A stretch of DNA of 64,000 nt from Heptranchias perlo (lineage: Eukaryota). The notes under the pieces were generated by a model. That model was not told where the DNA came from. It did no database searches and saw only the letters and a list, made by a program, of their open reading frames with translations. The stretch is from positions 5,270,001 through 5,334,000 of the forward strand of contig NC_090340.1 of NCBI RefSeq assembly GCF_035084215.1. The letters are read 5' to 3'. Below are positions 12,791 through 43,364 of this stretch, one piece after another; the first letter of the stretch is position 1, and each line of letters opens with the position of its first letter. The position numbers and the translations under genes are program-made.

Positions 12791-14849
12791 GCTTGGAGGT
12801 GGGGAGGAGTGGGGTGTTGGTGGTGGGGGGTGTTGGGTCGGAGAAAGAGAAATGAACGAGGGTGCTCTGTGTCTATGGTTGCCACAGTTAATTGGCGCAA
12901 TAAATATATATATATAATGTAAATACATTTGTGAACTTTCTCTAATCGGTGTGTTTTATGGATGCGCCCACAGCATCAACGTCATTCGTCAAATCATTCA
13001 GTGGAGAGTAAATCAAAATTGCTCTGAATGTTGGGAACTGTGTGACAGTTTTTTTTAAGGAACAAGAGGATTTCCACAGTAGGGCGGTTGCGAGACACAA
13101 TTGGCAAAAATACACCAACTTAATTGAACCTGAAGGTTAACTCCAAGGAGCAAGGCACTGATCCTTGAATCATCACAGCGTTATTTTCTTTTCACTGTTT
13201 GCAAACCGTTGCCTAATTTCAAAACCTTAATTATTTATGTTAAACGACCAGCAAAAAAGAGTGCAGTTATTGGAGGGAAAATGGAACGCAGAAGAAAAGG
13301 AAAATAAGTTTGACGAATCGCACTGTTGCGCTTCAGTTCAGCATTAATAACAGAGCATCTTCGGGTCAGTGGGTTAGAAAAGAACCAAATGCTATTGTTA
13401 TAGCCATAGCGCACTAATATTGTATGTCAGAGGGCAAAATAAACAGTGAACAATTCGTCTGATAGGCACATCGGATAAAACCGAACATTATTTTAACTGT
13501 GAATGAATGAATGCTTTTCCTTTTGTAAGGAAGAGCTCCTAAGGCCTTGTTTAGGAGTAATTATAAAATTGAGGCAGCATAGCCAGTCTTTGCGCTTCAT
13601 TGGAACGAACATTTCCTCGTTACTATAAAGAGCGGGCGAACTGCTCCACCAATTTACCGCCCGGGCAATGAAGGTGAAAATTAACCCCAGACGCCGTTGT
13701 TGCATATTACCCTATGCGAGTGTACGCGTTCATTGTACAGTTTTGATAAATATGCCTGAGAATGCAATATATTTCACAGCCCGGGAAAGGGGCTTACACA
13801 TTGACCTCCCGGAGAGAGGGTAACAAACGTCTTGATCCGATACTGCCACTGCGTCGAAGTTGAACTTACTGCCCAGTCCTGATGTTGGTATTGCCGATCG
13901 GACGCCTGTTAAAAATACTGCCCATTGATTTCAAGGGAAATAAAAATCGTGCCGTTTCTACAACAGGCCGTCAATCCGTTGAAAATGTCCCCCAGTGGGG
14001 GTTATTTCAACATTACCAAGGTGTGGGGAACTGAGGCCATCAGATGCCCAGTTTTGATTTCAACGGAAAGTGAAACTAGGTGAGGTGATTTATCTAACGA
14101 TAAGGAATGGGAAGCACACTTTACACCTGCCAGATATTCTTTTCAATGGACAACAAAATCGCGCGGGTGTAAGGCGGACTACCGTTGAAGCCCAATTACA
14201 CCTCCATTTGTCGAGTGATATGTAAAGTTTGGATTTAATTTAGGTAACTCGAGAAAACAGCCTAAATGTAACAAACTTAAACTCTTAGAATATGTTATTG
14301 CAACTTGAGTAGCAAATTCTTCAAGAACAGAGTAGCCATTTCCCAGTTTTGAAATTGTTGCGTTTTAATAATATCAAATGCTGAATGCAAACTTCTTGGG
14401 TGGTAATGTATAGGTTTTCTTGTTCATCAGACATTCAAATTGTTTATACAGCTGGTTACAGAACTATTAAAAAGAAAAAAAAAGAAAAATTGGACAAATA
14501 ACAGAAGCCACCGAGGTGAGCTTTTGAAGAATAGCAACATGCTTACAATAAAAAAAAGACAATAAGCTGCATATTACATATAACCGTTCGGCCTTGGAAA
14601 CCAAATAACAATCTCCCAAAAATCAGCAAGCTAGCAAACTTTCACAACTGCGGGGCAAGTCAAAATCGAACCCATTACGCCTCTATATAATATGCCATTA
14701 TTTGAGATTCGAAATGCATACGAATATTTGGTCAATCGTTGGTACACAATTTCAAATAATGATTTAGCAATATAACATTGGCTTTTTGCACATTGCCTTT
14801 CACGCTACTATTTTAAATTCGTCCTATTTAAGTTTATTTCCTTCGAATA

Positions 14850-16949
14850 AATTGTCTAATTTCTCAGTCTGCCCCAAAGGGAAAAACAGATTGTGGAGAG
14901 TAAGAAAATGACCATTATCTCCTAAATCTAAAACGGCATAACATGGAAATCGTGAACTTCCCAGCTATACGCTGTTCTTCTTCTGTTGGGTTAATTAGCA
15001 GCAATAGTTCTTGAATTGTAAATTCCAGCAGTTTCAATCCTCCGATCTCTCATGTCTTGTTTCTTTTCGGATCTCTAAACACTAAAATCAGAAGATTGTT
15101 TAGATTATTTCTAATTATTTGATCACTTGAGCACTATCATTGGTTCTTGATTTTGTTTTCAACCCAAATGCATTTCTTTAGCGTCTCACTGTGAGTTCCC
15201 CCAATTTCTGTCGAAGTTGAAGCAGAAGATCGGGAGAGCTCCGCGCAGAACATTCTGGCGTTTTAGATATAACCGATAACATAGTGAAGATGCTAATACG
15301 TCGATCTTTAATTTGGCTCAAACAAACTTAGTTTCAATGGCTTTGTTACAAATAGCAAATTCTTCACCCGGCTTCGCCGCAACTTCGACCAATGCAACAG
15401 GGCAACCGCGCATCAATCTATTATTCTGTTCTTTTTCAGGAACGGAAGTTAGGGAGATGACCCCCAAGTGGAATTCTGCCCTCATGATTATGTTTGTTGT
15501 ACAAAGAACCAGAAGATGAACGGTGGGTGCATAAATTTGCGACTTATAACGGGTCTCCCTCTAACTCCGGCAGGAGATTTGGGAAAGTCCCAGGAAAATG
15601 GCATAACCTGAAAACTGAAATTTACCTGTTCATCTGGAGCTTCCCAGGAAGTGGTAAGTAATTTTCTCAGTAAACCTATTTAATCGATTGGGGCCTGGAA
15701 TTCCACTAGTGTTCTCCCGCTTTCCTTCCCTACCGTTGGTGGGGAAGCCAAGAAAAAATGGCTTAAACCGCTAAAATGGTCGTTTGCGCCCTCCATGTGG
15801 CGTTTCCACCTGTCTAATATCGATGTTAGGCGGGACATCGGTGGATGTTTTAGAGTCTTGGATAATAAATGCCCCTCCAGTCACAATTTAGGCGGTAATA
15901 CTCTACCTGAAGAATTCAATTTCGCGGGTTCTCCACGACATTCCGTGTAACTTTGGCGGTACATAATTGTGACCTCGGGAAAAGACTCAAGCGGATAAAA
16001 CCTTCAATGCATATCAATTCGCCAATGTTTCCGCTGAAGTTAAAGCCGGAGATTGGGAGAATCAGACAGAAATCACCTCTTCCTAGAATTTCGGTAATTC
16101 TATGGAGCTCTTCATCTACGTTTTTAAAGGAAATTTTTAAAATTTATGATACCAGAATTTCGGAGATTCTCCCTATCCGCCGCCGTAACTTCGACAAAAA
16201 AAAATTTTACAAGCGGATTAGCGGGAGAACCCCGACGGAAGATTACCCCGGACAAGCGGGAGTGTCCCGTAGATATTCCCTCAATTTTATCATAGATTAA
16301 TTTATATTGGAGTAATAATTATTGGTAATACTGAATGAAATCTTATCTTTTGAAACAAATCGTTTGGCGGTAATCCACAATGATGATGGCCAGCATCTAA
16401 AGGAGGTAAATAGCTGATATAAATTGGGATATCAAATCAATTCGGGAAAAATTGTCAGCACCTGCAAAATGTACATAAAACAGAAGTGCAGTGTTTTATG
16501 TTCTACTGAGAAACTTCACAATAATATTAAATAAATAAACAAATGGATGAATTAATGCATGGATGAACAAATAATTGAACGAATGAATGAATGAATTAAT
16601 TAATTATACAGAGGAAGGACGCAAATTGCTGTTTCGGTCCTGTGGTATTGCTAACTTGATTACTTTTATTGACGATAACTTTTACTGTATTTGCTTTTTA
16701 GAAATGTAACAACATGATCATCACAATATCAGGCTCTAGCTGCGCTACTCTAAATATTGAGTGTGCAATGAATAAAGAATTGTTTGGACAGAATCCGATC
16801 ACAAGATTTTCTTCTATTTCCAAAAGAGTATGTAATTCAGATCCAAGTTACTCGAAATCTGGTGGAGCAGTGGCTGATGTGTTGTACTTAAGTGCGATCT
16901 AAGCATTGTAAAGCGGCTGGGCTTGTCCTTGCACTATCTCAATAGAGCA
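14850..16949 (-). pseudogene. Ig-superfamily receptor paralogue 3 remnant: decayed C1 exon (~16664-16949), TM exon (16348-16461), putative cytoplasmic exons (15190-15254; from 15074)
   Basis: C1-like IVQGQAQPLYNA*IALK[C>Y]NTSATAPPDFE/VTW has the same IV-to-C and C-to-W spacing as paralogue 1. The 114-nt TM exon GADNFSRIDLISQFISAIYLL*MLAIIIVDYRQTICFK is colinear with the paralogue 2 TM exon. Out-of-frame CYAVLDL near 14923-14943. Confidence 0.55.
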
Positions 16950-18200
16950 CTGCAACAAATTGCATTTTCTTTTCATGATATAAACCCGCGATTCACTATC
17001 CCAATATTATTGATGTTGAAACTAACCAATACTCCGTTAGAAATTGATGCAAAACAATGTTAGGCTGAAAGGGCGCCAGTGAATTTTGTCATCGGTCTAA
17101 TTAGGCTAATTTCAATTTTACCTGGAAGGCAATGAAGGAAAATAAAATGTCTGATTCTGTATCCAGAGCTCATCGTCTTGAAGCAGCGCTGATTGAGAGG
17201 TCCAGAATTTCCCGAATTTCCATTCTTTTAAAATAAAGGGACGGAGGATCATGCACCGCCTATTCATAGCTTCTGGCCAGCGCTTCCTGTCATCCCTGCT
17301 CCGTCCCAGGACTGACGGTCGGCGGACAAAGCGCCAATGGGGTAGATTTTGAGCTGTCTCTTAAGCGTTTGACGGAGTCCAAAGCCTCATTACTAAAATG
17401 GCCGCAGACTGCTCCAAATTTTCAGTCCAATGATTTCAGTTGTGAGAAGTTTCTGCGCGATTATTCAATAAACGTTTCCAAACCCACCTTCATACAGGAC
17501 TATCTACCCAACGTTTACATTATGAAAATAAATCTGACACGTTCAATGCCTCATATCCTTCTCTTTTAAAAAAAACATTTTTTTCGGTATATGCGCGTCG
17601 CTGGGAAGGCCCACGTTTATCGCCCAACCTTGAGTCACTCAGAATGTTTATGACAGGTAAATATTCCTAACACCAATTTTGGCACATGATCAGGTCAATA
17701 TGATTTTGAACCTATCAGATTACTACTTTTTTTTCCAAACTGAATATTTGAGTAGAGAATGTGTCACTATTTTAAAATATTTTCCTCCTTCTAATGATCG
17801 CCTCGTCACATCATGTTCTATAAATCAGAATAGTGAGATAAAATGATCTCAGGCGCCCTGCTTGTCTGAAGACAGATTCTACTGCAACCATTCAACTGAG
17901 GGCGAATGTAGCCCGAGTTTACTTTTGCCGATGCTGATGTTGGGCCAATGTGGCTCTTACTCGCCCGGCGCTCTCGTGCTCATCGACAATGGTGCATCAG
18001 TAGCCGGACAGCAGCGTTTCAATAAGCATTCAGCTTTCTGCACTTTTGCAAACTAGTTACAAAATGAACTCAGTTCACATTTTATGCACTCGGGTCCCAA
18101 GGCCTTGAAAATAGAGAGAGAATTGTGCCTGCTCGTGCATTGCAATTATCTTCGCCTTCCACCTCGCTTCTGTTCAGGATTATAATGAGTATTAGCTCCC

Positions 18201-18362
18201 TGGGGTGCATTTTCAACGTGCTGCCGGGGCGTAAAAATGGCGTTGTGCATCAGCAGATACATAGAAGCCTCACGATTTTTATTAAATCAGGCGGTTTCTC
18301 AAACGGGCGGCCCACCAGCAACGCTAGTTTCACACCCGGGCCTCTAGTTAAAAACCTACCCA
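18201..18362. mobile_element. MITE-like element (Harbinger-type ends)
   Basis: Imperfect TIRs GGGGTGCATTTTCAAC / GTTAAAAACCTACCC. Similar ends at 38308-38388. Confidence 0.45.
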
Positions 18363-18889
18363 TTTATTTATATTTTATGTCACTCCACCTACATGTTGGT
18401 GAAGTTTTTTTTTACAGGCGCACGGCAAGTGAAAGGAGCTTTAAAATGATCCCAAATGACCTTTCGATGAGATCAATCTTGTTTTTTGACCTTACTTGTT
18501 TGTTAGACATTTCACCACTGCATATTTCTTTGAATAGGATGTTTGTTTGATTTAAACCTTACCGCTTGATTCCGCCAAACCAACAAACCTGCGCCCGCGA
18601 GCCGCTTTGCTTCACCGAAGCACGAAGTACAGCAGCACATGCAAAATGTCACGCTTTTCCGCCAATAGGACATGCAAGTGCCACTTTAAGAAGCTTTTAA
18701 GTCTATTTCTCCTACTGCCTAGAAAAGCACACTCTCCGTTTGTGACTCTAAACGCACTGGGAGCGGACCAGCTGCATTTTAATCATGGGAGAGCGGAAAA
18801 CCGATGGAAGTGAGCTTTGTGGCCGAACAGCGTAAAATGTTATGGCCAAAATCTGTAACATCGCTATGTTACTGGGGACAGAATTTCCG

Positions 18890-20310
18890 CACTGAGCTTC
18901 TATCCTTTACGCTCTTGTTCAAAAGCTACCTATATCTGTGACACTATGTTGCTCTCTGCCGCGTTAACGATTTAATTTACTCCAGACTCGGTAACTCCAT
19001 TTTCCTCATGTATAAACATGCCCTCCAGCGATCATCCCTTACCGTGAGTGTCCCCGGGCCCTGAATTCTCTGAGCAGTGATCCAACCAGTCCTTCCCCAA
19101 CGTCGTCCTCTGCCTGGATGGACTTAATCATCCCTTGAAGAACTTCTCTTTTAACCCCACTCACTTATTCCCTATCAAGGGGTTAAGATGAGAATATACT
19201 TGGATCCTAGTTATGCCTGTATTTTTTTTGAGGCTATGTGGAACACTTTGTTTCAGTCCTACTCTGCTTACATATTTCATCTCTAATCATTGTTTCCCTC
19301 CTCTGCTTTCGTTTCTGGCAAAGGACTTTGCTCAGATCGTCGTTTACAAACCTATTGACTCTAAATACTGCATGAATTGTGTCTTTCCTAGCCTGCTTCA
19401 CGTGAAGGCTACTCCGGCTTCTCCCATTTCATCTCTGTCATTACGTCTCTAATCACGCAACTTGCTATGCCAGAACAACCAATTCTGCCACACTACGTCG
19501 ATGAACAGGATCCTTTACTGTTTCTGTCCTATCTCCCAGACTTCAATGGAAAGAAAAATCGGGTGATAGAAAACGGGCTGCCTATTGTCTATTACCTGTT
19601 TTACACCATTGCACAAAGTCCAAATTACCGCCAGTGTCGTTCAAACTGCAGCACATGCCATGTGGTTCGAACGTTCATTTTAGTAACCTCAAAGCTATGA
19701 TATCCTGTATCTTCTATAAAGCAGGGGATGCTTGAGATGTGATGTGGATATATCTGTGTCCAAACGTATGGAAGGTGGATTGATTTTTGGAAACTCGTTG
19801 TCAGAAATTAGCGCTGAGCCTGTGATGTTGATCTGTGACTTCATGTTATCAGGAAAGGCGCCAGTCCAATTTTGCATTTTAATTAAAATATGTTGCATTT
19901 GCACTCTGTTTATGTTCGTTTTTTTGTTTCTTTTCTCCCCTGTCTCTTTTTTCACTGTAATCCGATTTGGATCTTACCCCGTGTATTTCCACCTTACACA
20001 ACTTATAATCTCTGATACCTTTAAAACACTTTCTCCTGCCTCACTCATGTTTCCTACCGTCTAGCAGTTTTAGGTAAGCACTTTATAGTAATATTAGTCC
20101 CTCGTTACAACTGGGTTGCATGTGGATTCTATCCCTCTTACGTTTTCCCTCCCCTTTTCCAATCAGGTCGGTTCACCTTTTAATCTTCAGTTCTGATGAA
20201 CCAATACCCTACTGATACACCGTGACCTCTACTTTCTCTCCACAGATGTTGTCTGTCCTGTTGTGTATTGATTTTCTTCTTATTTCAGGTTTAGAGCTTT
20301 AGCCATTTTT
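18890..20310 (+). mobile_element. Degenerate Penelope-like element
   Basis: Decayed PLE RT motifs: approx. KGV.M....GPSYAC.F..YVE at 19170-19250 and YKPIDS at ~19345. Terminal segment CAGTTCTGATGAA...TCTCTCCACAGATG at 20188-20250. Confidence 0.65.
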
Positions 20311-20914
20311 GATTAGATTTTAATTTGCATCTGTATGGTAAGTGATTCGACTGCATCATTCGCTAGGCAAAGATTAGCCTTCTCCGTAATCAAATTCAAA
20401 TAACATGAGCTTTATTATAGAAAGTCAGTGCAAGTCTGAAAGGTTTATTATTTATTCACGGCTTTCCCATTGGCTAACGTCTACCTTTCTCACAAAACAT
20501 GCACAATCAGGCTGCCTTCAGCTGGATATGGATCTGACGGATTGAGAGCAGAATGTGAAAAACATTTTAAATTTCATTGAAGAACAAAGGAAAAAAGTTA
20601 ACTGAAAAGGGAAACAATACATTGGAGTGTATTTTGCATTAAACAAAAGTATGACATCTAAATTTCAACGTTTCACGGTTTTTACACCGGTATTATGCCG
20701 GGGTGCATGAAAAGCTAGAGAGAATCATACCCCTTACAGTTCCAGCAATCTAAAGATGATGTTGCCTGTCTGGAAGCCGAACTGTCGCTGTTGTTACAGA
20801 CCAGTAACAGCAATGTCGAAGCATCCTATGTTGCAGTAGTTCTGGATATGTTCCTTTAACACTGAATTGAAAAAAAAGAAATATCTGCAGGTTGTAATTA
20901 TTCCGGCATCTTAC

Positions 20915-21226
20915 CCGGGTTCCAAATAGTTTCCAAATAAACAGCTAACTTCGGAGTCTGGAGTGCGGTGTAAGATACCAAACAAGTAAAATAGATCCCT
21001 CTCTGGAGTGGCTGTACCTCTTGCAGAATACTGGAAGCTTCATAGAGTCCCGCTGAGTTCAGATGCTTCGTGGTTTTTGTCATGGTTACAATGTTCCTTT
21101 TATTTTTATACCAGCTGAGAGTGAGAGTCTCCGGGTTAAACCCAAGCGTTTCGCATACGAGATTCAGAGAAATATTTGAATTTCTGTCAGGTGCTTTGGA
21201 GACAATCGTCGGTGAAGCTGGCGGAG
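20915..21226 (-). CDS. C1-set Ig domain exon, open, phase 1/1 (paralogue 1)
   Basis: LNLVCETLGFNPETLTLSWYK..GLYEASSIL..YFTCLVSY. AG acceptor, GTAAG donor, 312 nt. Confidence 0.88.
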
Positions 21227-23237
21227 CTATAGCGCGGTCTAGGTAAACCAAAAATAAACCCCGTCCTTTTAAATTTAGAAGATTATTTACTTTAGTATTG
21301 CATTTCCCCAAATTCAAATCAATTGAGATGATTCATAATCAGCATGTGTTTGTTGAATTTCATTGAAATGAAAATAATACTATTGTACTTACTTGCCGGA
21401 CATCTGCTACTTTCATAAATGCTCAAGAAACAGCTGTATTTATAGTGCGTTTTCTCACGTCTCTCACAAGCATAACAATAATCTCACATACAGGGAATTA
21501 CCTTCAATTGCAGTAATTAATGGTTGTAATGTTGACAAACACAACCGGCCCATGCTTCGACCAGTAAATCCCACAAATAGCAACAAATAGCTCATCTTTT
21601 TCTATTGTTCTGGATTGACTGGGGAATTCTGGACAAAACAACGGGATATTGCTCGCTTTCATTCCAACAATTCATTGGGATATATGGATTCCTCAATGAA
21701 AAGCTCACGGAGTTGTTTGGATAGCTGTCCCCAAATACAGCAATATTCCCTCACTACTAAATTAAAGCGTCAGACTAGATTAATCCCTAAATCCTGCAAT
21801 ATAGCTGGAATTCAAGGTCTGGAATTTGTACAGCAGTTCTCCGATCTCCCCCCGCGAACCGGCAATAGATCGGCTCGAACCCTGCCACACGGCATATACG
21901 CTGTTCAGTCAACGTTTACGCCGATATTCTGCCGAATTTAGAGCAGATCATGATCCCAGGAGAAAGTCAATCCTCACTGCACCTCCCCCTCCCCGAAAAA
22001 AACGTCTTTCTGATTTAGAGCAAAAGTGCAATTAACTGTGCGAAAATAAGACCCTGAGCTGGATATGTGATTTCCCCACCAACTTTCCACCAGATATTCT
22101 GAATTAGATGCGGACTAACAGTATGACTAACGCTCTAAATAAAAAAAAATATCTCGTCACATCTCACTTTCCGCTGCAATCAGCGCTATGAGTGCAAAAA
22201 AATCCATTTTGTTCCTAAGCCGGGGTCTTGTTATCAATTACGTCAGTTTTGAGGAAAGGTATATAAGAACATAATCGTAATGTTTATTTTTAAAAGTCAG
22301 ATTATTAACACAAATAGGCGTCTGTTACTGTCACTGACTTCAAGTGCGGAACGAAACTTAAAAACAACAGTGATAACAATCCAAAAACAGATGATTTGTG
22401 TGGTTGCATCTTTAGAGTCTGAAAGTGCTTTATAAATGAAATTCCTATTTTGATTTATGAACATTTTCGATATAGCTGTTGCTGGAACGTTATTTTGCAT
22501 CGACCCCGGGATATATTGGTGGGAACTTTTCCCACATCATCGGTTGGTTTTAATTTTAGAATTGTATTTTGTCTTTGTACTCGACAATACATTTTGAAAC
22601 GATCAAACTTTCAGCCTTTGGATTTGTGAGAATGTACTCAATGTGATCTCTTTTTTACAATCAGAACATTGCATGCATTCCCTGCGGATAAAGGTCATTC
22701 CACTCAATGTGTTAATAAAGCATCGACAAATTATTTCATAATGTCTGTAATTTTGCCTGAGTTTGAGTAACATTGTATATTGTTTCAAAATATACATGAG
22801 GTACTATTCGCGCTGTTTTTAATTTGCAATTTATGCACTGAAGGCATTTAACATAGATTGTCATTGTGAATATTCAGTCGTGATATGAAGAATCCATGAT
22901 AATAGATACAAAAAAATGTACAGGTCTCTGTGCTATTTTTAGACATTGAAATTATTTGTGACACAATTCTTACCAACTTACGGAACACGATGCACACAAA
23001 AACACCGATTGGTCCATCCAGGTTATTTCACACAGTTGTGATGCCTTGTGCATCACAATATATACACGCCACCCTACCCGGTGTCGCGTTATTTCCCGGG
23101 AGAGGCAAATAAATAGATAAAAAAACAAAGGTAATGAGGGAAAATATCTCGAACATTCCTCTCCGACGATTGGAATTAGTCCAGGAGACCACTGCGGCCC
23201 TGATTACAACGACCCCATCCCTTGCAATATCACTTAA

Positions 23238-23553
23238 GGTGGACAACAAGTCTTGATCCAGGTCCGATTCTGATCGTGTTTCTCTGGTGTTTGACTCCGC
23301 AGTAATGAACCCAGCAAGCTGGAGACGGACTCAAGGAGCTGGAGAGAACCTTGTCCTTTCCTAATAATAAATAGTTTCCTCCTGTCTGAGATTGTTTGCA
23401 GAAATACGGTTTCGCCGAATCTCTACCAGTCAACATTCACTTGTGAATTTGCTGGAAAATGAGTGAACGCACAAGCGAAGGTAATGTTTGCAACGACCGT
23501 AACAAACTTGCTTTGGGAACTTTGTGACAAATGAAGCACGGCATCGCCAACAA
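23238..23553 (-). pseudogene. V-set exon with germline J-like end (paralogue 1)
   Basis: NITFAC..VNVDW* (TGG>TAG), GSLQLL, frameshift, then VHYCGV..IGPGSRLVVH. The donor reads CTTAAG instead of GGTAAG. Confidence 0.85.
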
Positions 23554-33790: not shown

Positions 33791-34119
33791 ATTAATTAAT
33801 CTACAACAGACTCAGAAATGTCACGGGGAAAAACCTACTGATGGGTAGTGTAGGTCCAAAGTCACCTTGTTCCTCCCAAGCATGCTACACTTACCAGATG
33901 TCATGTCTCAAATTACTCATATGCTGACGTTCTTCGATTAATCGAATTTATACTAAATGGAGTTGATGTAATTTAGTGATAACTGTTATATAGGCAACAG
34001 ATCACCTTGTCTTATCTTTTTCGTGTCTTACCAGTATTGCCTGACTAATACGACGTGGCTTTTATAGGAAAGAACCCAGTACACAATAGTGTTGCTATCA
34101 GAAAGGGTTGAACTGAATT

Positions 34120-35327
34120 ATTTAGCTAAAAATTTTAAACGATTTATTAATGTCTGTTTTAATATAAGTGGCAAAGGAATTTCATACATCAGGAAAGGAT
34201 TTGAAGGCAGAAACAAATTGGCCTCTGCTGTTCCTCTTTGTGTTTCCATTGGAAACTGCGCATAGACTGAACGATTTGCCTTTCGTTTAGGCTTTTCTGT
34301 TTTCTTGGATTCAGCCCAATTCCAGCGCAGCGTATGTCAGATTGTTCTCTGCGTCCCTTGCTTTGTCTGTAAAACGATCCTTAGGGAATACCATTAGTAC
34401 ATGGCCAATGTCAGTTTGTTCATGAGTCAAAGTAAAAATCACAAGTTAGAAAGCCAACACGTAATGCGATTTAAATATACCCGATTAGCAATATAGTGAC
34501 TCCGCTACCAGGGTGACTCGTTTTTTATATTGCCTACCTGGGGATACACAGTCCTCTCCTCTTGATACTTCCTCTTGCAGTTTTCATTGACCTGGTCCAA
34601 TTTAATACAGTGTAAGGCGCTGTCTCATTCGCTGATCCCTGCATAGATCGCAAAGTAATGCATATTATATAGTTTATTCATTACATTTGTGACATTGTAG
34701 CTTATTGATTACACATTGAACCCAACGGTCAGTAGTACTAAATCCGGAGATGGAAAGTGAAACATTAAAGTAAGTTTTTACTCTTTCAATCATAAAATAG
34801 GATATAATTAAGGCACTATATATTATATTTTACTCTCTCGATATGGACTATGGTCATGTTATAACTAAAGTTGTTACACAAGTTACAATTTAGTTATTGC
34901 TCCGTGTGATCGCACATAGGCCTAATGAAACCTAAATAATTTGAGGCGCATGTACCCGCGAGTTTATAGTTTACTTGTATGTTGTTGCTAATAACTACAT
35001 CAGCATTATAGTATGTACATCATGTCTTTCGGAAACGATTTCAAAATATAGCAAACTAGATCTAATACCTGTAAGAGATAAATTGAATTTAGACTTTTAT
35101 CGCTGAAATATGAAATAAATATTTATTCTATATTTTATATGGTCTAATGTTTTCTATTCAGTCGCGAAGTAACGAATTTCAGCCCAGCGGATTAATCGTA
35201 CGAAGAAAGTATTTCATGCTTAACCTCACTACCCATTTTCACTTTACACGTCAAACGTGGTAGAATGAATGATAAGAACCTACCGGAACTCGGGGGTGCT
35301 GTGGTCGCTCCATGACATCCCTTGTTC
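34120..35327 (-). pseudogene. Cytoplasmic exons with tyrosine motifs (paralogue 2)
   Basis: GTRDVMERPQHPRVP (35284-35327); VNENCKRKYQEERTVYPQ (34538-34591); terminal exon with LTYAAL (34323-34340) and SVYAQF (~34253-34270). Confidence 0.75.
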
Positions 35328-35877
35328 CTGGTAATGAATCGCATTGGAGATTTCCTAATCAATTATTTGCTTATATCATTCTCCATGATTCCAAATCCAT
35401 TTCAGGCAGGCTTAATGGGCAGTCCAACTTTATGCTCAGTAACACAACCTAAAACTTCCTCAATACCTGAATCTGTTCAATGTTTACTCTCAAATACTCA
35501 TTCCCCGATTTCGTGAAATTACTGGGTCTTATTCGAGTCAGATCCCACGGGGTCTAGAGCCTTCATATTTTGACGCGTAATAAACTTAATGTTTGAGCCT
35601 AGAGGATGAGTCTTATCAGTTTACTTGACGGGAAAACGCACCACATCAGGTCCAGCCGTCCACTCACTTCCACACAGGTAATATACCTGCAGAAATAGGT
35701 CACAGCACTTTTATCCGAAACAATACCCATTGTCCTATCCTCTGTTAAGACGTAAAAGTCGATTCGACCGACTCATCGCTGTGGGACAGATTATTAAATT
35801 CAGCGCATATTATCCCTTGACCCATCTCCCTGGCTTCTATCATCAGGAGCGCACCACGCCATCCAGTTACACTGGAG

Positions 35878-36313
35878 AAGAAAGAACTCATATTTAAACA
35901 GCACCCTCCACTGCGCAAACACGTCCCAAACAGATTCACAGCCAATGAAGTGCTTTTGAAGTGTAGTCACTGTTGTAATGCAGGAAACGCGAGAGATGAT
36001 TAGGTACAGCAAGTTTCCACACACAGCAATGTGATCAATAGGGAATTAAACTGTTTTACCGATGTAGATTGGGGGGTAAATGTTTGGCAGGATACCGAGG
36101 GACCTTTCTTGTTCTTTCGTAAATAGTGTCATGAGATTTTTTACATCAAACTCATAGAGCAAACGGAGCCTCGGGTTAACGTCTCATCAGAAAGCAGTCC
36201 GTCAGTGTTGCACTGGGGAGTGGGCCTCGTTAATGTGTTCATGTCTCTGAAGAGGAACTTGAACCCACGGCCTCAGACTATGAGATGAGAGTGCTACCAC
36301 TGAGCCAAGGCTG
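35878..36313 (-). mobile_element. tRNA-headed Deu-domain SINE (SacSINE1/AmnSINE-like)
   Basis: A/B-box head TGGCTCAGTGG...GGTTCAAGT; Deu-like core CACATTGCTGTGTGTGGAAACTTGCTG...ACAGTGACTACACTTCAAAAG; L2-like tail. Confidence 0.8.
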
Positions 36314-36409
36314 AAAGCAATTTATTTCATCGCCTCCCGAGGCAACTTCACTTGATCAAGAAAATACTGAAGGACACGTGGAACTGATGTTAACTGGATA
36401 CTTTCATAC

Positions 36410-36523
36410 CTTTGCGCTTGATCAATGGACATTACTTCCCAATGATTATCACGAGAATTACAACTAAGATGCCAACTCCTGCGGATCCATAGACTTGTCT
36501 GTACCATAGTACATTGTCACCTC
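36410..36523 (-). pseudogene. Transmembrane exon (paralogue 2) with in-frame stop
   Basis: GGDNVLWYRQVYGSAGVGILVVILVIIIGK*CPLIKRK. 114 nt, AG acceptor, GTATGA donor, no charged residue in the hydrophobic core. Confidence 0.82.
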
Positions 36524-37129
36524 CTTCAAAATGAATGTCAACTATAACATTTCAAGTTGTACATTGTGACAAAGTGTTCTGCAGTCCCACAGATCAATAT
36601 CTCTTACCAACCCTTTGAACAGCTATTTCATTTATTTGGTGTCCCACAGCATGAAGAGACAATTAAAGCATTTAATGAGTCATTTTCTCCGTTCTTTAAA
36701 GGGTAATTTTATTAAAAAGTCAGAGAATTTAGTTACCTTCATTCGGTCTCTGTGCATTGCGGAATACGCTGTGTTTACAATGACACGGATAACAATTGGC
36801 AATTCTAATTTTGTTTGGACGAAGCGACAGTTTATTTTAGGCATGTGTATGCAGTCATATTACCCTTCTTATATTTCCTTTTCCATTTTCAGTCATTACC
36901 TTTACTTAAAGTATTTAAGCGAACCTTTCTATTGCGTGAAGCGTAACAGTTTACCACCCCGCCACCACCCCGCCACCACCCCCCCCCCCCACCCCGCCCC
37001 CGCCGCACCCACCTACCAAACATTATTCAAGACGATTATTACTGGATTAAAATACTTATATCACTTGTTACATTATCCCAGCGAAATAGGAGTTAGATAT
37101 GGAGGGTGATTCAAGCTCGGTCGCCAATT

Positions 37130-37312
37130 GTTAGTGAACCAGTTGGGCTGATGAGAAAATCGGCCAGCTTCATGGTCACTTTTACTGAAAGCAGCATTTT
37201 ATTTCCAGATTTTTCTTTCAACTGCCGTCCAATTCTCAAACTACCATGCCGAGATCATTAGTCCATGCATCTGGATTTCTGTTCCAGTAACATAACAATT
37301 ATACTACAGTAC
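37130..37312 (-). mobile_element. 5' fragment of a second tRNA-like-headed repeat
   Basis: Head GTTATGTTACTGGA..AATCCAGA also at 48415-48466; body GTGACCATGAAGCT also at 5012-5070. Confidence 0.6.
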
Positions 37313-37485
37313 CTCTGCTCTCCATTGAATAAAGTACAGTACAAGACCCATTCGCCAACAGGCCTGGAACTGTCCCATTCATCCATGTCCTTGTTCCTCT
37401 GAAGAGTTCTAACCCATCAATGCACGTTTAACGGACTGTGGACAGAATTGCGCAAATGCCAAATACGGTCCATGACTTGAACTAT

Positions 37486-37776
37486 CAGTCTTGGTTCAGT
37501 GGCAGCACTCTCGCCTCTGAGTCGGAAAGTCGTGAGTTGAAGTCCTGCTCCAGAGCCGTCTGCACATCATGGGACCTATATCGTCGTTCTTTCATCGTCG
37601 CTGGGTCATAATGCTCGAAACTCTACCTTACAGCATTGTGGAAGCAGCTTCACCACATGGACTGCAGCGGTTCAAGAAGAAGGCCCACCCCACATTCTCA
37701 ACGGTAACTAGGGATTGGCGATAAATCAAGGCCTTGCCTGAGTCGCCAATATCCCGAGAATGAATTGAAAAAAAAT
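37486..37776 (+). mobile_element. SINE with tRNA-derived head and LINE-B 3' tail
   Basis: Head matches the DeuSINE head (36245-36313, reverse complement); 37570-37776 matches 7243-7450; ends in an A-run. Confidence 0.82.
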
Positions 37777-37838
37777 CTAATCTGGAACTTCCGTTTATTT
37801 AGAAGATGTTGTTTGCATTTGTGAGAATTGGTTCTTAC

Positions 37839-38165
37839 CTCCAGTACTGGTAGAAAAGAATCGGAAGTCGGCTGCCGTTTGGACGGTGAGGTGAGATACC
37901 TGGCAGGTAAAAATAGTCCCACTCTCCAAAGAGTCTGCCTCTTCCAAAAAGCTGGACACTTCATAGAGACCTCTTGCATTCAGCTGTTTAACGGTGTATA
38001 TCCCGGTGTCAATGTTCACACCATCCTTGTGCCAAGTAATATTGATGTTATCTGGATGTTATCCGCAGTTTTACACATAACAATCAGAGAAGCAGATGTT
38101 GTGTGTAAAACCTCGTTTTAGATGTTCAGCCTCGTTGGAGGCAATATGCAGTGGGGTTGGGGGAA
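37839..38165 (-). pseudogene. C1-set exon (paralogue 2), frameshifted
   Basis: VPPTPLHI / SLIVMCKTAD / PDNINITWHKDG..GLYEVSSFLEE..TIFTCQVSH, then G|GTAAG. Confidence 0.9.
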
Positions 38166-38307
38166 CTGTATAACAAGTTACAGAAGAGGTTAGAAATTAG
38201 TAGAATATTTTAGAACGTAGGAAGTTATTCTATTTCTACTAGATCAAAGTCATTGCGATATTAATAATTTCTACACATCAAATGACATGTTCATTTATGG
38301 AAACGTT

Positions 38308-38388
38308 GGGTGAATTTTCAACTTTCTGTCTGGGCGGAATACAGGCGAAGCGGATCAATCACTCGGCGTCGAGTTGAAAATCAACCCC
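38308..38388. mobile_element. ~80-bp MITE-like element
   Basis: TIRs GGGTGAATTTTCAACT / AGTTGAAAATCAACCC. Confidence 0.5.
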
Positions 38389-38557
38389 ATTAACTTACAG
38401 AATACAATTTCTAACGAGACACTGGCAAGCTAAGCAATGATACCTTCTACATCAATGCTAGAAAAAATATAGATGGACGATAGAAAGATATGGAGAATCA
38501 TGAGACCACTGTAACAAATACATCTCTCAATATAACTCGTAATTAAGAGCAAGTAAA

Positions 38558-39364
38558 AATGGGTTCAATTGATTTTAGGGAGGACGACTGGTAGACGTTC
38601 ACTTGTAAACCTGACTCTTGACTGAGAACATGACGAATAACATTTATGCTTCGGTGACAAGTTAACTGTTGAATTCAAATGGTTATATCTCTCACTATGC
38701 AGCATTCTAGTTTAAACATTGGGTCCCTCTACGACGAGTCCCCCGCAACATTCCTGTTTGTCTATTGTGTACAGCTTTTCCTTTCTTCCAGCTTATGCTC
38801 TTCTTTTACCTCTGTTGTTAAACTACGCTTTAGCTGAATTTCAATGGGTTCAATTGATAATATAGTTTGCAGTACTTCACATTTTGACGTTCTAACTTTT
38901 TTAATTTTAAAGAACGATCGATTCACGATCAAATTGCTTTAATACTGTATATAAAAAAACAGATTGAAAAACATTCATCTCAACTGGAATATTTTGAAAA
39001 GTTGTCAGAAGTTTATTAACTTCCGAGGCAGTTTTAGAACGTTAGAGGGGATTTTGAAGTAGTTATTGAGAACAGTTTTGGAAAGGTTAAGTTGAAACAC
39101 AGCTAAAGCGTAGTTTAACAAGGGAGGTAAAGGAAGAACATAAGCTGGAAGAAAGGGAAAGCTGTACACAATAGAAAAACAGGAAAGTTGCGGGGGACTC
39201 GTCGTAGAGGGACCCAATGTTTAAACCAGAATGCTGCAGAGTGAGAGATATAACCATTTGAAATCAACAGTTAACTTGTCACCTAAGCATACATGTTATT
39301 CGTCATGTTCTCAGTCAAGAGTCAGGTTTAATAGTGAACGTCTACCAGTCGTCCTCCCTAAAAT
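38558..39364. repeat. ~273-bp inverted repeat (arms 38572-38844 and 39092-39364); left arm flanked by a 16-bp direct repeat
   Basis: Direct reading. AATGGGTTCAATTGAT occurs at 38558-38573 and 38843-38858. Confidence 0.92.
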
Positions 39365-39858
39365 GCATTCTACTCAGTTAAACCCAGCAAATGATGTACC
39401 ATCGTCGTAGTGAAATGAGATTTATTTCGCTCCGTGTGTTGATTTAAATATTGTTTTCTTTGCTAATTATCAATAATGTATTTGTAACGATATTAATGTT
39501 TCAGTAATGTTGAACCTCATATTCCTTACTAGGTGCATCTTAGTAGAAGCAATTAAATAAAATAATCAATGGCAAATATATGTCACGTTCAGTCCTTGGT
39601 AGCATTATATTTGAATGTCATTTTAATGAACGTTATATTGCAGTGCTGTCCATTCCAAAATGTTAATTAATTCGAAACGTGTATACATGAAGCAAGGCAC
39701 TGAATAAGAATTAAAATGTAACTTCCAAAAGACGCAATGCAAACTCGTGAATGCCCCATACCTGGATCGTGATAAAATATTAAAAAGCAGCCGGTCCCGT
39801 TTTTGTTTTTTTCGCTATCCAAGTTTGTGAAATAATTTCAGGTAGAAATTCCACTTAC

Positions 39859-40178
39859 CGTGGATAAGAAGTTTTGATCCAATTCCATTAGCAATCCGAC
39901 CACCCGGATATTTCACTCCGCAGTGATAAACTCCAGAGTCCTCAGCACTGACATTCAGGAACTGAAGAGAGGCCGCACCTTTCTTCAAAGGAAGAAATCG
40001 TTTTCTGCTGTTTGAACCTAACTGCAGAAACTCATTTTCGCGAATTTCCACCGGTAAACACTCACATTTGAATTATCGTGAAAAAGAGGGAACACACATT
40101 GAAAAGTAATGTTTCCACCTGCGATCACGTGAGCACTTTCAGGGGCTTGGAACACTCTCATCTGCGCATCTGCAACAG
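39859..40178 (-). pseudogene. V-set exon with germline J-like end (paralogue 2), 1-nt deletion
   Basis: VFQAPESAHVIAGGNITFQC..VYRW / ASLQFLNVSAEDSGVYHCGV..NGIGSKLLIH then G|GTAAG. Length 320 nt, one short of a multiple of 3. Confidence 0.92.
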
Positions 40179-40449
40179 CTGTGAGAAAATAAATGCAGCA
40201 ATAATTATATATATCGCACACACACTGCTTGCGGACAATAATTATCAACCTTTGGTAGTAAGAAGCATTTGCAGATGATTCATTGTAATCTTTGAGGCAA
40301 CTATATATGATATTACAAGCCTTAACTGTGCTGTCTGCAATTAGTTCATTTTACTCAGTGAAATCCATAGTATTTAATGTGCCTTACTACCTAATTTCTA
40401 TTTTAAAAGTAACCTGATATGTAGCGCAGACCACAACTTTAAATGTTGA

Positions 40450-41750
40450 GTTGTACATGCCTTCTCTGACAGATGTTGAAGGTCTGATGGATCAAACATG
40501 GAGCAGATCAACTGAGATTTGGCTGATACAAAGCAGGGATTAAGTTCTTGAGGTAACTCCGGGGCGAAAGGACTTCATTGAAAGATTTTTCTTGTATTAT
40601 GTTCTTTTGTCCTGGCAATACATCCGATCACCATATTCACTTTGACAATAGTCTCGTGGCACTGATCATAAATTATGGACTATAACCATCACGTCTTTCT
40701 CCCACGAAATATCCTTGAGCATACCAGCCGGCATCGTGCATAAATGGGGTTGATTCTATCCAAGTGCATGTCGCTATATGCGTCCATATTAAAATATATC
40801 TACCAGACACGGTTCATTATTTCATTGAATCTAAATAGGTCTGCAGTCATATTTAATTTTATCTAAGGTCCTGATATCCGGACATATGTTCGTGCAATCT
40901 ATATATTTGCAGATAGCTTCCACTATGCCTCTGCGCAGATAGTTGATGCATAATGCAGTGGTCCTTGCATTAAGCCATTAATAACTCTCTTCTGTGCCCT
41001 GAATGTAATAAACCCAATCAAAATCCACTTGCTGATCCTACAAGATCCAACCTGCGTTAGTAGCCTTTTATGCAGAATTCTAGGAAACTATTTTTAAAAG
41101 TTTAAATGCACAATATCAACATGGCTTCCATCACCTTCCAAATTTGTAAATTATTGGAAAAATGCAAGCAAGTTGTTGAGACAGAACCTTCTTTTTCAGA
41201 AGCCATGCCTGGATTCCCTAACAAGCCTTTCTCTTTTAATGGGATAGTACAGCGCATATCTAATGATCCCACAGTTTCGAGGTTCTCACTTTGTGCCATT
41301 TGACATATAGGTACCACATGGCCCCTCACGGATCCATGGGAACAATCCCACACAGGAAAGAACTTTTAGTTATGTGTGCAAATGGCTAAAATAACATCAT
41401 CCACATTTATTGGAACACTCTCGGGTGAATGCCTTCAGCGCCAGCATCCCGATCTGATTCACCACACTAATTGCAGTAAGGACTGCATCCGTATGCAGAT
41501 CAACAGGTTCACTTTTAACATCAGCCTCATGTTTTATTATGGGTAAAACGGCATCAGTGTCAGCAGTGTCAGATGCTGTCAGATGCTAAGATCCCAGCTG
41601 AATCGTTCAATGGTCTTGTCCATTCTTTGATGAGCCTATCATGTTTACCATAGCTGAAAAAGAACTAGCTTTACTACGACGCCTTTTCACTATATTTTTA
41701 CCTGTGCCCTTGTGGCTAATCAGTCAGCAACTTTCATTTTCGCTAATGCA
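40450..41750 (-). mobile_element. Ancient CR1-like RT remnant
   Basis: Decayed HGF.K.RFCLNNLLAFF and VDIVHLNF.K.F.RILHKRLL at ~41060-41210. Confidence 0.6.
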
Positions 41751-43364
41751 CGAACCTCGGGGCTTAAATAATCTTGGATTTGTGAACGAAAAAACCCCCA
41801 ATAATAACGAGAAACAACTAAAAAACATACCATAAAACACAAGAGATGAATAGAAATGTTGAACACAGGGAAATACCTGTATATGTAATCTCCAAGACAA
41901 ATATCCAGGGAAGTATAAACATGTTTAGAAATGGAATTGACTGCATGCTATGGTTTGGCGCCAATCTCTGATAGTTTGCAAACACTGGCTTACTTAGGGC
42001 AACATTCGAATGGAGAGATGATGACGCATGCGGCTCAATCTGTGCTGTCAGAGCGGAAAATTGTTTTAAGAGATAAGATCTGTGCACGTAGTTATGTGTT
42101 TATGGTGGGCTATAACCTCAACACAACAGTATTTAATCCCAAGGCTGTAGCATCAGCAAATATCTTTAAGGAACTAGAAGGATCACACCTTTGATGGAAT
42201 TCATTTTCTCGACAACAAAGTCAACACGATTGGCTGACCTCATACAGCGCCATATATCTTCATGTACATTCAACTAACTTTAGGAAAAATTGCTAGCGAA
42301 CCGCCATCCATAAAGCGAACGGCAGTCTCAGACTTGCACCTCAATTACAATACACAAAAGAAGCGCAATAAATACTGTCGGTTCTGCCTGGCGTTGCGAT
42401 TAATGACCATAGATCTTTGTGAGTTTGTGTTTAGCATTTTGCGGTCTGTCTGTTTAAGTCCTGAAGAAATAAAATGAGTGTCATGTCGCATAGATTGAAC
42501 AATAAGACAGGCCATATAATTCATAAGACATCAATTGATTCAATTCAGCGAGCGGGCCAGAAACAGCAAAGTAAGAACGAAACAAATGTCCAAAAAGTGT
42601 TAAGAAATTTCAGACATTGTGTGAAGGCGTACCAGTGGAATTTGAATCAATAAGTATACAGGTGAGTAGAATTAATCTGCTGTTTAATTGAATCAATATC
42701 TCAGCTTTTCAATATATGTTGAAGGATTGTGTAGAATTGTTCCAGGCAATAACCACATGCGTGTCTACATCATGTGTTGCAAATACAGTGTCGGAACTGC
42801 CGGTACACGGAAATGCACGAATAAACCATTGCCTTTCTTTACTCCGAGGCTTATTATTTAATCCACATTCAACAATGCAATCAAATAAAGCAGAAATCGC
42901 AATTCAGTTGAGGCCCAAAAGGTCATCTGCTTCTTGTTCAATGTATGGACGGCCAGACCTGCAAATGCATTTTATTCGGATACGTGAGTTGCAGGCACCA
43001 CAGTTTAAAACTACGACTGTTGCAGATGAATTGTTTCATGCTCTTAACCAAATATCTTTTTAACCGACATCATGGGTTGTAATGTCGTGTTGTTATTAAC
43101 TGAGAAACAAACTGGAAAGCATATCAAAGATCAACAGTCAAACAGTTATTCCATTTTCCTGTATATTGATCGACGTATTATCACATTAAACAATCTGTAC
43201 TTTATCCAACAATCTACTTGATCAAGCACGGAATCATCCCCAAAAGGCAACAAATTTGAGAGAAAGGAGCTCATTCAAGGTCTCACAACATGGTCATTGA
43301 AATATCATTGCAATAAAGATGCTCGAACATCTGGACAAAGATTCCTCTGTTTTAAGAATGAACT

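What the first reader, a model, noticed from the sequence alone, without database searches (positions are those of the whole stretch)
34120..40310. Non-rearranging antigen-receptor-shaped inhibitory receptor: germline VJ + single C1 + TM + ITIM/ITSM-like tail
Seen: a phase-compatible exon chain on the minus strand. The V exon already contains a J-like GxGSKL strand with no RSS, followed by one C1-set exon, an uncharged TM and Tyr motifs TVYPQ, LTYAAL and SVYAQF. Established: C1-set domains are largely restricted to Ig, TCR, MHC, tapasin and SIRP, and VJ-C1 is the TCR/IgL chain layout, whereas SIRPalpha is V-C1-C1 and NKp30 is V only. Inference: this is a cartilaginous-fish family of TCR/IgL-shaped innate inhibitory receptors, relevant to models of the pre-RAG ancestral antigen receptor.
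Basis: partly seen in the sequence, partly recalled or inferred. Interest (0 to 1): 0.8.

Follow-up and report, generated by a model that had tools for sequence, protein, structure and literature searches.

The report
Broken shark SIRP-like receptor gene copy
This stretch is a decayed, non-functional copy of a shark immune-receptor gene that belongs to a large cartilaginous-fish family most similar to the mammalian inhibitory receptor SIRP-alpha, so the copy itself is ordinary while the family has no paper I could find.

Summary
They are a V exon with a germline J-like strand and no RSS, one C1-set exon, an uncharged TM exon and tail exons with Tyr motifs. This copy is a pseudogene. It has at least seven disabling lesions, and the three quoted Tyr motifs lie in three different frames.

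An intact paralogue is in RefSeq: XP_067853494.1, Heptranchias perlo, named [quoted passage not shown], i.e. SIRP-alpha-like. RNA contigs about 95% identical to the window splice these exons with GT-AG introns. They match that protein at 16 of 16 informative sites, so they report the paralogue and not this copy.

The family is large. All 46 of 46 hits are chondrichthyan and carry inconsistent automatic names. Its C1 domain groups with SIRP C1 domains with moderate support. V-C1 and C1-TM-tail are collinear with bird SIRP-alpha, including four tyrosines.

My reading is a single-C1, SIRP-related inhibitory receptor family, not a new category. I found no paper describing it. The scan has noted other members, some apparently intact, elsewhere in this genome.

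The parts
41877..41946 (-). Leader (signal peptide) exon of copy A. ATG at 41946, 23 codons plus 1 base, GT donor.
   Evidence: tblastn of P0046 residues 1-26, 81% identity. Translation and donor read.
39859..40178 (-). V(J) exon of copy A. V-set domain with the germline J-like strand NGIGSKLLIH. Frame broken by a 1-nt deletion near 40040.
   Evidence: Pfam V-set. Two frames needed. The paralogue's RNA contig has one extra base at 40040. No RSS. AG acceptor and GT donor.
37839..38165 (-). C1-set exon of copy A. Carries a 19-nt surplus (about 38100-38124) and a 1-nt deletion (about 38061). Two stops lie in the shifted stretch.
   Evidence: Pfam C1-set E 5.4e-8 on 37841-38058. Indels relative to the paralogue's contig. 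Translations.
36410..36523 (-). Stalk/transmembrane exon of copy A. Uncharged TM. In-frame TAA at 36432-36434 where the paralogue has Gln.
   Evidence: Translation. P0046 alignment 33 of 37 identical. Spliced to the C1 exon in RNA contig record 4.
35284..35327 (-). No lesion seen.
   Evidence: Joints 35326/36409 and 34637/35283 in RNA contigs. tblastn 93% over 15 aa. Splice sites.
34538..34638 (-). Cytoplasmic exon with PYTVL and, after a 1-nt deletion near 34571, TVYPQ in another frame.
34223..34367 (-). Last coding exon, homologous part only; the 3' end is uncertain. TKQGT, LTYAAL and SVYAQF lie in three frames. Frame changes near 34353 and at 34315.
   Evidence: The P0046 tail is shown.
23239..23551 (-). 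V exon of a second, more diverged family pseudogene (copy B). In-frame stop at the conserved WW, a frameshift, a degraded J motif, and the donor GT lost.
   Evidence: Closest public protein is P0172: 65% and 71% identity for the two V pieces.
20916..21238 (-). C1 exon of copy B. Open frame, 74% identical to P0172 and 44% to copy A. No TM or tail exons found downstream.

Best explanation
The locus is an unprocessed (intron-containing) duplicated pseudogene. It belongs to a large chondrichthyan multigene family of type I membrane receptors.

Intact members are built as signal peptide, V-set domain with a germline-joined J-like G strand, one C1-set domain, uncharged TM, and a cytoplasmic tail with four or more tyrosines in ITIM/ITSM-like contexts.

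Inferred mechanism for intact members: the V domain binds an unknown ligand; tail tyrosines are phosphorylated and recruit SH2 phosphatases, as in SIRP-alpha; this damps the cell's activation.

Shown here: the family is the cartilaginous-fish relative of SIRP that carries one C1 domain instead of two.

This copy arose by local duplication from the gene for XP_067853494.1. Exons are about 95% identical at the nucleotide level. It has since collected at least seven frame-breaking or nonsense lesions and cannot make the receptor. The expression and splicing evidence belongs to the intact paralogue.
For: Pseudogene:
- Lesions are read directly, and relative to the paralogue's RNA contigs.
- No contig of the 3 runs laid matches the exons better than the ~95% paralogue contigs (table 8).

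Paralogue and expression:
- P0046 = XP_067853494.1, Heptranchias perlo.
- Contigs join V|C1|TM|44-nt exon|tail exons at CT..AC (minus-strand GT..AG) joints.
- 16 of 16 amino-acid-changing contig differences with an aligned residue equal P0046.

Family:
- 348 proteins at E<=1e-3 to the copy-B C1 exon.
- 46 of 46 word-index hits to P0046 are chondrichthyan, and 8 clusters lie on the same 66.5-Mb H. perlo contig.
- The domain plan and tyrosines are conserved in the 26-sequence alignment.

SIRP relationship:
- C1 trees.
- The family V profile hits coelacanth SIRP V at 28-34 bits.
- BLASTP against rhea SIRP-alpha-like: V-C1 E 1e-13, and C1-TM-tail E 4e-18 with four collinear tyrosines.
- PDB profile search: SIRP-alpha 106.7 bits covering V plus the first C1.

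Fold:
- The AF2 ectodomain is confident.
- The C1 domain superposes on MHC II, CL, IgNAR C and TCR C domains at Z 14-15, rmsd about 2 A.
Against: - The SIRP link is only moderately supported (88/72; 96/77). In the larger tree two long-branched IgH domains sit between the family and SIRP.
- The AU test only says a family+SIRP clade is not rejected (p 0.51).
- The trees hold no TCR, MHC, beta2m, tapasin, B7H6 or butyrophilin domains.
- The V-only profile scores TCR V-alpha, pIgR, VL and PD-L1 V above any SIRP V in the PDB; no SIRP entry is among the 60 shown.
- Foldseek ranks Ig light chains first. VIA-align ties B7-H6, butyrophilin, UrIg2 and Fab chains.
- ITIM/ITSM tails recur in many receptor families, so tail collinearity could be partly convergent.
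- The lesions were not checked against DNA reads of the same animal. The three runs listed are marked only 'RNA?' (a guess), and I read them as RNA because their contigs are spliced.
- As laid, the 3' RNA contig lacks the one base needed to put TKQGT and LTYAAL in one frame as in P0046. At least that detail is unexplained.
Confidence: 0.8

Rival explanations
1. The family is an independent non-rearranging antigen-receptor-like lineage (VJ-C1, TCR/IgL-shaped). It would be a relic of the pre-RAG receptor rather than a SIRP relative, and the SIRP-like tail would be convergent.
For: - One V(J) and one C1, as in IgL/TCR chains.
- phmmer, the profile search and Foldseek put Ig light chains, aligned over V-J-C, at or near the top.
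- The V-only profile prefers TCR V-alpha and VL over SIRP V.
- UrIg2 scores similarly to SIRP-alpha in the full-length profile search (117.5 against 106.7 bits).
Against: - The C1 separates from UrIg-like, IgL-like and CH1 domains at 96/88 and groups with SIRP C1s.
- The family V profile does not detect the two UrIg-like V domains tested.
- End-to-end collinearity with SIRP-alpha, including TM and four tyrosines.
- PDB rankings are inflated by multi-domain chains and by the huge number of Fabs.
- The leader intron is about 1.7 kb.
Confidence: 0.2
2. The family belongs to the B7/butyrophilin-type V-C1 group (B7H6-like ligands) rather than to receptors of the SIRP type.
For: - RefSeq names 3 of the 46 hits NCR3LG1-like and 3 CD276 homologue.
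- PD-L1 V is the best single-domain V match, 35-38 bits over strands A-F.
- The best low-rmsd two-domain structural match is B7-H6: Z 14.9, rmsd 4.7 A, 193 residues, 23% identity.
Against: - The PD-L1 match stops before the G strand (profile positions 9-87), whereas TCR and VL matches include the J-like strand.
- The tail is collinear with SIRP-alpha.
- The Z values are tied within about 2 units across many IgSF families.
- The interdomain angle of an AF2 model is uncertain.
Confidence: 0.07
3. The copy is actually functional, and the frameshifts and stop are assembly errors or belong to one null allele.
For: - Splice sites of all seven exons are intact.
- Exons are still 85-95% identical to the working paralogue.
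Against: - At least seven independent lesions of different kinds, including a 19-nt surplus and a nonsense codon.
- No RNA contig matches this copy itself.
- A second decayed copy lies 16 kb away.
- Of the contig differences tabulated for the V exon, 10 change the residue and 1 is silent; 22 further differences were not shown by the tool.
Confidence: 0.04

Closest known systems
SIRP family (SIRP-alpha / SHPS-1 / PTPNS1; SIRP-beta, SIRP-gamma)
   Same: - N-terminal V-set domain with a germline J-like G strand, followed by C1-set domain(s).
- Single-pass TM.
- Tail with four tyrosines in two ITIM-type pairs, collinear with the family's tail.
- The C1 groups with SIRP C1s.
- RefSeq's automatic name for the paralogue is SIRP-alpha-like.
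- SIRP is listed among joined-VJ IgSF members in PMC11599192 (passage read).
   Different: - One C1 domain instead of two. The pig, coelacanth, bird and tenrec SIRPs examined have two (also stated in PMC12975943, passages read).
- The family is sister to SIRP, not nested within it.
- Much larger copy number in sharks.
- V is no closer to SIRP V than to TCR or VL V in the PDB.
- Ligand unknown.
UrIg and UrIg2 (non-rearranging shark VJ-C1 genes; PMC12227049, abstract and section 7 read; PMC10751288, passages read)
   Same: Non-rearranging single-exon VJ domain followed by C1-set domains, in cartilaginous fish. PDB entry 9dmx is among the better matches.
   Different: - UrIg2 has 9-11 C domains and no ITIM is mentioned (0 occurrences of 'ITIM'). 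Here there is one C1 and an ITIM-type tail.
- The family V profile does not detect the two UrIg-like V domains tested.
- C1 domains fall on the other side of a 96/88 branch.
- That P0001, P0004 and P0133 are UrIg/UrIg2-like is my reading of their architecture, not a name given by a source.
Immunoglobulin light chains / TCR chains
   Same: V-J-C1 layout. They are the best Foldseek and phmmer matches over both domains.
   Different: No RSS and no separate J segment. Membrane receptor with its own signalling tail.
PRARP, NITR, NKp30 (other germline-VJ receptors)
   Same: Non-rearranging V with a J-like strand and, for some, ITIMs. The list of joined-VJ members comes from PMC11599192 (passage read).
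   Different: As I recall (not tested here), their second domain is C2 or I type, or absent. Here it is C1-set. No sequences of these families were available to compare.

Membership tests
SIRP family | N-terminal V-set domain with a germline J-like (GxG) G strand | tested here: met
   Pfam V-set on the window exon. NGIGSKL in the window. The first and third G of the GxG motif are invariant or at least 90% conserved in 26 members.
SIRP family | [quoted passage not shown] | tested here: not met
   One C1 exon in the window and one C1 in 25 of the 26 aligned members by architecture. The SIRPs examined have two. Exception: skate P0029 has two.
SIRP family | Cytoplasmic tail with four tyrosines forming ITIM-type motifs, collinear with SIRP-alpha | tested here: met
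   Met in the intact paralogue P0046: 29% identity over 260 aa, E 4e-18, four tyrosines aligned. In the window copy the motifs are present but out of frame.
SIRP family | Domains group with SIRP domains in trees | tested here: inconclusive
   Family C1 is next to SIRP d2 at 88/72. Family plus SIRP plus two IgH domains stand against the rest at 96/77. AU p 0.51. Comparators are incomplete.
SIRP family | Conserved synteny with the SIRP locus; CD47 binding | not testable with these tools
Besides the two copies, the 64-kb window showed one reverse-transcriptase ORF among the 7 of 17 long ORFs scanned.
Rearranging antigen receptors (IgL/TCR) | V segment ending in an RSS, with separate J segment(s) | tested here: not met
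   No heptamer or nonamer in 39700-40300. V and the J-like strand lie in one exon followed by a GT donor.
UrIg/UrIg2 | VJ followed by three or more C1 domains, with V and C grouping with UrIg | tested here: not met
   Single C1. The V profile gives no hit to the UrIg-like V of P0004 or P0133. The C1 tree separates them at 96/88.
C1-set immunoglobulin domain | C1-set sequence profile and fold | tested here: met
   Pfam PF07654 at 33.5 bits against a cutoff of 21. The model's second domain superposes on HLA-DP beta2 (Z 15.2, 1.8 A), CL, IgNAR C and TCR C.
Functional gene (as opposed to pseudogene) | Uninterrupted reading frame across the spliced exons | tested here: not met
   At least 7 lesions.

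The most novel reading that the evidence does not exclude
The chondrichthyan V(J)-C1-TM-ITIM family may be the single-C1 sister lineage of SIRP, retained from before the bony-vertebrate SIRP gained its second C1. That would make it a living example of the VJ-C1 membrane receptor layout proposed for the pre-RAG antigen-receptor ancestor. The family has expanded in sharks into a large, fast-turning-over repertoire, with pseudogenes such as this one and possibly tail-less or activating partners. It could play the role that KIR, LILR or NITR families play elsewhere.
Probability: 0.25. Interest if true: 0.65.

Novelty: new variant of a known kind. Interest (0 to 1): 0.35.

Why it matters
The copy itself matters little. 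It is one of many decayed duplicates in a birth-and-death gene family.

The family matters more. Cartilaginous fishes carry dozens of non-rearranging V(J)-C1 receptors with SIRP-type inhibitory tails. RefSeq labels them inconsistently: SIRP-alpha-like, tapasin-related, Ig lambda-like, NCR3LG1-like, CD276 and MHC II beta-like. I found no paper that describes them.

A proper description would do three things:
- clean up shark genome annotation;
- give the SIRP family a deep root;
- add a membrane-bound, single-C1 comparator to the current UrIg/UrIg2 debate on antigen-receptor origins.

Tried and rejected
The paralogue's signal peptide maps to 41877-41946.
- I looked for TM and ITIM exons downstream of copy B (14000-20950) and found none.
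- The ESM Atlas search gave only generic V/C1/C2 clusters and did not help.
- The C1-only PDB profile and the full-length profile are dominated by multi-domain Ig chains whose scores add up, so they cannot rank single domains.
- Foldseek and VIA-align cannot separate SIRP, B7, IgL and UrIg2.
- The search with coelacanth SIRP found 13 proteins, none chondrichthyan. The word index is insensitive, so this shows nothing about absence.
- ARAGORN found no tRNA-like gene in 34000-42100, so I make no SINE claim.
- I did not build a V-domain tree, because no TCR, Ig, NKp30 or B7 V sequences were available from tools.
- Literature searches found no paper on this shark family. One search was badly ranked and uninformative. 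J Immunol papers on UrIg (PMC10530332) and B7H6/NKp30 (PMC3709836) are not held, and PRARP is known to me only from a reference list and recall. Supplements were not opened and may list such genes.
- Notes of the scan put MHC-like findings on other pieces of the genome. I did not test this.

Full report
WHAT IS IN THE SEQUENCE

On the minus strand of 34100-42000 there is a seven-exon immunoglobulin-superfamily gene remnant, which I call copy A. Reading the DNA and its three frames gives these exons:

- A V exon at 39859-40178, with an AG acceptor and a GT donor.
- A C1 exon at 37839-38165.
- A stalk/TM exon at 36410-36523.
- Two tail exons at 34538-34638 and from 34367 downward.

Pfam supports the two Ig exons piece by piece. 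The 3' V piece scores V-set E 1.6e-5 (25.5 bits). The 5' V piece is weak (E 0.046). The 3' two-thirds of the C1 exon score C1-set E 5.4e-8 (33.5 bits, cutoff 21).

The V exon ends in NGIGSKLLIH directly before the donor. No RSS heptamer or nonamer occurs in 39700-40300 on either strand. The TM stretch carries no charged residue.

THE COPY IS BROKEN

The V exon needs two frames. The C1 exon has a shifted stretch with two stops. The TM exon has an in-frame TAA. The motifs TVYPQ, LTYAAL and SVYAQF lie in three different frames.

Compared with the RNA contigs of a close paralogue and with that paralogue's protein, the lesions are:

- one base missing near 40040;
- 19 surplus bases at about 38100-38124 and one base missing near 38061;
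- a nonsense codon at 36432-36434, where the paralogue has Gln;
- one base missing near 34571;
- one base missing near 34353 and one surplus base at 34315.

The paralogue's signal peptide maps to 41877-41946. That exon has an ATG at 41946, a GT donor and a leader intron of about 1.7 kb. A 44-nt exon lies at 35284-35327.

Each was read and searched separately.

A SECOND COPY

Copy B lies 16 kb away, with its V exon at 23239-23551 and its C1 exon at 20916-21238. The V exon has a stop at the conserved Trp pair, a frameshift, a degraded J motif and a lost donor. Its C1 exon is open. No TM or tail exons follow.

Seven of the 17 ORFs of 130 aa or more elsewhere in the window were scanned against Pfam. 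One matched a family, a reverse-transcriptase ORF at 62544-63098.

THE INTACT RELATIVE AND THE RNA EVIDENCE

A HMMER scan of 1.84 billion representative proteins with the copy-B C1 exon found 348 proteins at E<=1e-3. Many are 230-400 aa proteins with the match just after a V domain.

One of them, P0046 (377 aa), is XP_067853494.1 of Heptranchias perlo, named [quoted passage not shown]. It matches copy A exon by exon:

| Piece | Identical residues |
|---|---|
| V, 5' piece | 37 of 42 |
| V, 3' piece | 54 of 60 |
| C1, 3' piece | 68 of 72 |
| TM exon | 33 of 37 |

P0046 carries all the motifs in one frame: PYAVL, TVYAQ, LTYAAL, SVYAQL and TIYTE.

The look-up of sequencing runs listed three runs of one sample. 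None is on record as RNA. Their contigs, laid on 34230-40200, include an 846-nt contig that joins the TM, C1 and V exons at 36522/37838 and 38165/39859. Further joints lie at 35326/36409, 34637/35283 and 34352/34538. All have CT..AC ends on the plus strand, which is GT..AG on the minus strand, except the last. The last shows GT..AC and 15 unplaced letters that correspond to the first 15 bases of the last exon. The V-C1 intron has no coverage. These contigs are therefore spliced RNA.

They are only about 95% identical to the window. At 16 of 16 amino-acid-changing differences with an aligned residue they carry the residue of P0046. They report the paralogue's mRNA, not this copy.

One detail is unexplained. 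As laid, the 3' contig lacks the base that would put TKQGT and LTYAAL in one frame as in P0046.

Because the contigs share sample and near-identity with the window and equal a H. perlo protein, the window is most likely from H. perlo.

THE FAMILY

The word-index search with P0046 gave 46 proteins, all from cartilaginous fishes: H. perlo, Callorhinchus milii, Heterodontus francisci, Mustelus asterias, Scyliorhinus torazame and S. canicula, Hemitrygon akajei, Mobula hypostoma, Pristis pectinata and Cetorhinus maximus. Eight clusters lie on the same 66.5-Mb H. perlo contig.

Their automatic names disagree:

| Automatic name | Hits |
|---|---|
| SIRP-alpha-like | 18 |
| Tapasin-related | 9 |
| Uncharacterised or Ig-like | 6 |
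| Ig lambda-like | 4 |
| NCR3LG1-like | 3 |
| CD276 | 3 |
| SIRP-beta-like | 2 |
| MHC II beta-like | 1 |

An alignment of 26 members shows a conserved plan: V with YWWKxGE and NGTGSxLxV, then VPPTPLK...LVCETAxFYPE...W...YTCxVSH, a TM, and tail motifs xxYAxLxL, EERTVYAQTKQ, LTYAxLDL and TEYAEL.

A skate member has a duplicated C1 (P0029). A subgroup has a different, basic tail without these motifs (P0084, P0121, P0141).

The scan's notes list many more members on this chromosome and on other pieces, some described as intact. I did not test those.

WHICH KNOWN FAMILY IS CLOSEST

PDB searches with P0046 or the family profile put Ig chains, UrIg2 (9dmx) and SIRP-alpha (2wng) in one range. SIRP-alpha aligns over V plus its first C1.

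Domain-wise results:

- The V-only profile prefers TCR V-alpha, pIgR, VL and PD-L1 V. No SIRP entry is among the 60 shown.
- Among stored proteins, the family V profile detects coelacanth SIRP V (28-34 bits), some bird SIRP V (19-27 bits) and pig SIRP V (17 bits). It does not detect the V of the UrIg-like proteins P0004 and P0133.

In a C1 tree of 56 domains:

- the family is one group (99/97);
- its neighbour is SIRP domain 2 plus lungfish SIRP-like domains (88/72);
- this larger group is split from UrIg2-like, IgL-like and CH1 domains at 96/88.

With 58 domains the family (98/89) and SIRP (92/86) stay on the same side (96/77). Two long-branched IgH domains are interposed there. Holding family+SIRP together costs nothing (AU p 0.51).

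BLASTP of P0046 against a rhea SIRP-alpha-like protein gives two collinear alignments:

- V-C1 against V-d2, 27% identity, E 1e-13;
- C1-TM-tail against d3-TM-tail, 29% identity over 260 aa, E 4e-18, with the four tail tyrosines aligned.

Other members behave alike (small database, composition correction off).

The AF2 model of P0046 is confident over the ectodomain. Its second domain superposes on classical C1-set domains at Z 14-15. The two-domain matches (B7-H6, butyrophilin, Fab chains, UrIg2) are tied and decide nothing.

READING

The weight of evidence makes this a SIRP-related family with one C1 domain. It is sister to bony-vertebrate SIRPs rather than nested in them. The locus in hand is a dead duplicate.

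The inhibitory mechanism (tyrosine phosphorylation, SH2-phosphatase recruitment) is inferred from the motif pattern and its collinearity with SIRP-alpha. Nothing here tests it.

The V domain is as close to TCR/VL V as to SIRP V, and SIRP is itself counted among joined-VJ relatives of antigen receptors (PMC11599192, passage read).

The sharp contrast with SIRP does not hold. The published shark candidates for that role are UrIg and UrIg2 (PMC12227049, abstract and section 7 read; PMC10751288, passages read), and they differ in V, in C number and in lacking such a tail.

NOVELTY

Seven literature searches found no paper on this family. Gene models are public but inconsistently named. Subscription papers and supplements were not visible.

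I rate it a new variant of a known kind. This copy is of low interest, and the family is of moderate interest.

Noticed in passing
window 38557-38844 and 39092-39379: A 288-nt inverted repeat, 92% complementary, with arms 247 nt apart, sits inside the V-C1 intron of copy A. It could be a foldback or MITE-like insertion, or an inverted duplication.
   Followed up: partly
window 20916-23551: A second family pseudogene (copy B). It is closest to P0172, which RefSeq names 'CD276 antigen homolog' of H. perlo. It has a decayed V exon, an open C1 exon and no detectable TM or tail exons.
   Followed up: yes
window 35830-36029, 37030-37229 and 37430-37829: Contig depth in the three runs reaches thousands to about 100,000 in these intron bins, with many loose ends. 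These are very high-copy, transcribed repeats. ARAGORN found no tRNA-like gene here.
   Followed up: partly
window 62544-63098: A minus-strand ORF with a reverse-transcriptase domain (RVT_1, E 2.2e-12). It is retroelement debris flanking the receptor copies.
   Followed up: partly
window 39859-40178 compared with the paralogue's RNA contig: Among the listed differences between copy A and the expressed paralogue, the V exon has 10 amino-acid-changing and 1 silent difference. The 3' part of the C1 exon has 4 changing and 5 silent. This means either relaxed constraint in the pseudogene or diversifying change in V. The list is incomplete, because 22 differences were not shown.
   Followed up: partly
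window 34352-34367 compared with RNA contig record 1: As laid, the 3' RNA contig would read TKQGT and then a stop, with LTYAAL out of frame, unlike the RefSeq protein. This could be a third close paralogue with a disarmed tail, or an alignment artefact at the exon edge.
   Followed up: no
proteins P0084, P0121, P0141 (other chondrichthyans): A subgroup of the family has the same V-C1 ectodomain. Its TM region has a distinct FPWWIY motif, and its lysine/arginine-rich tail lacks ITIM-type tyrosines.
   Followed up: no
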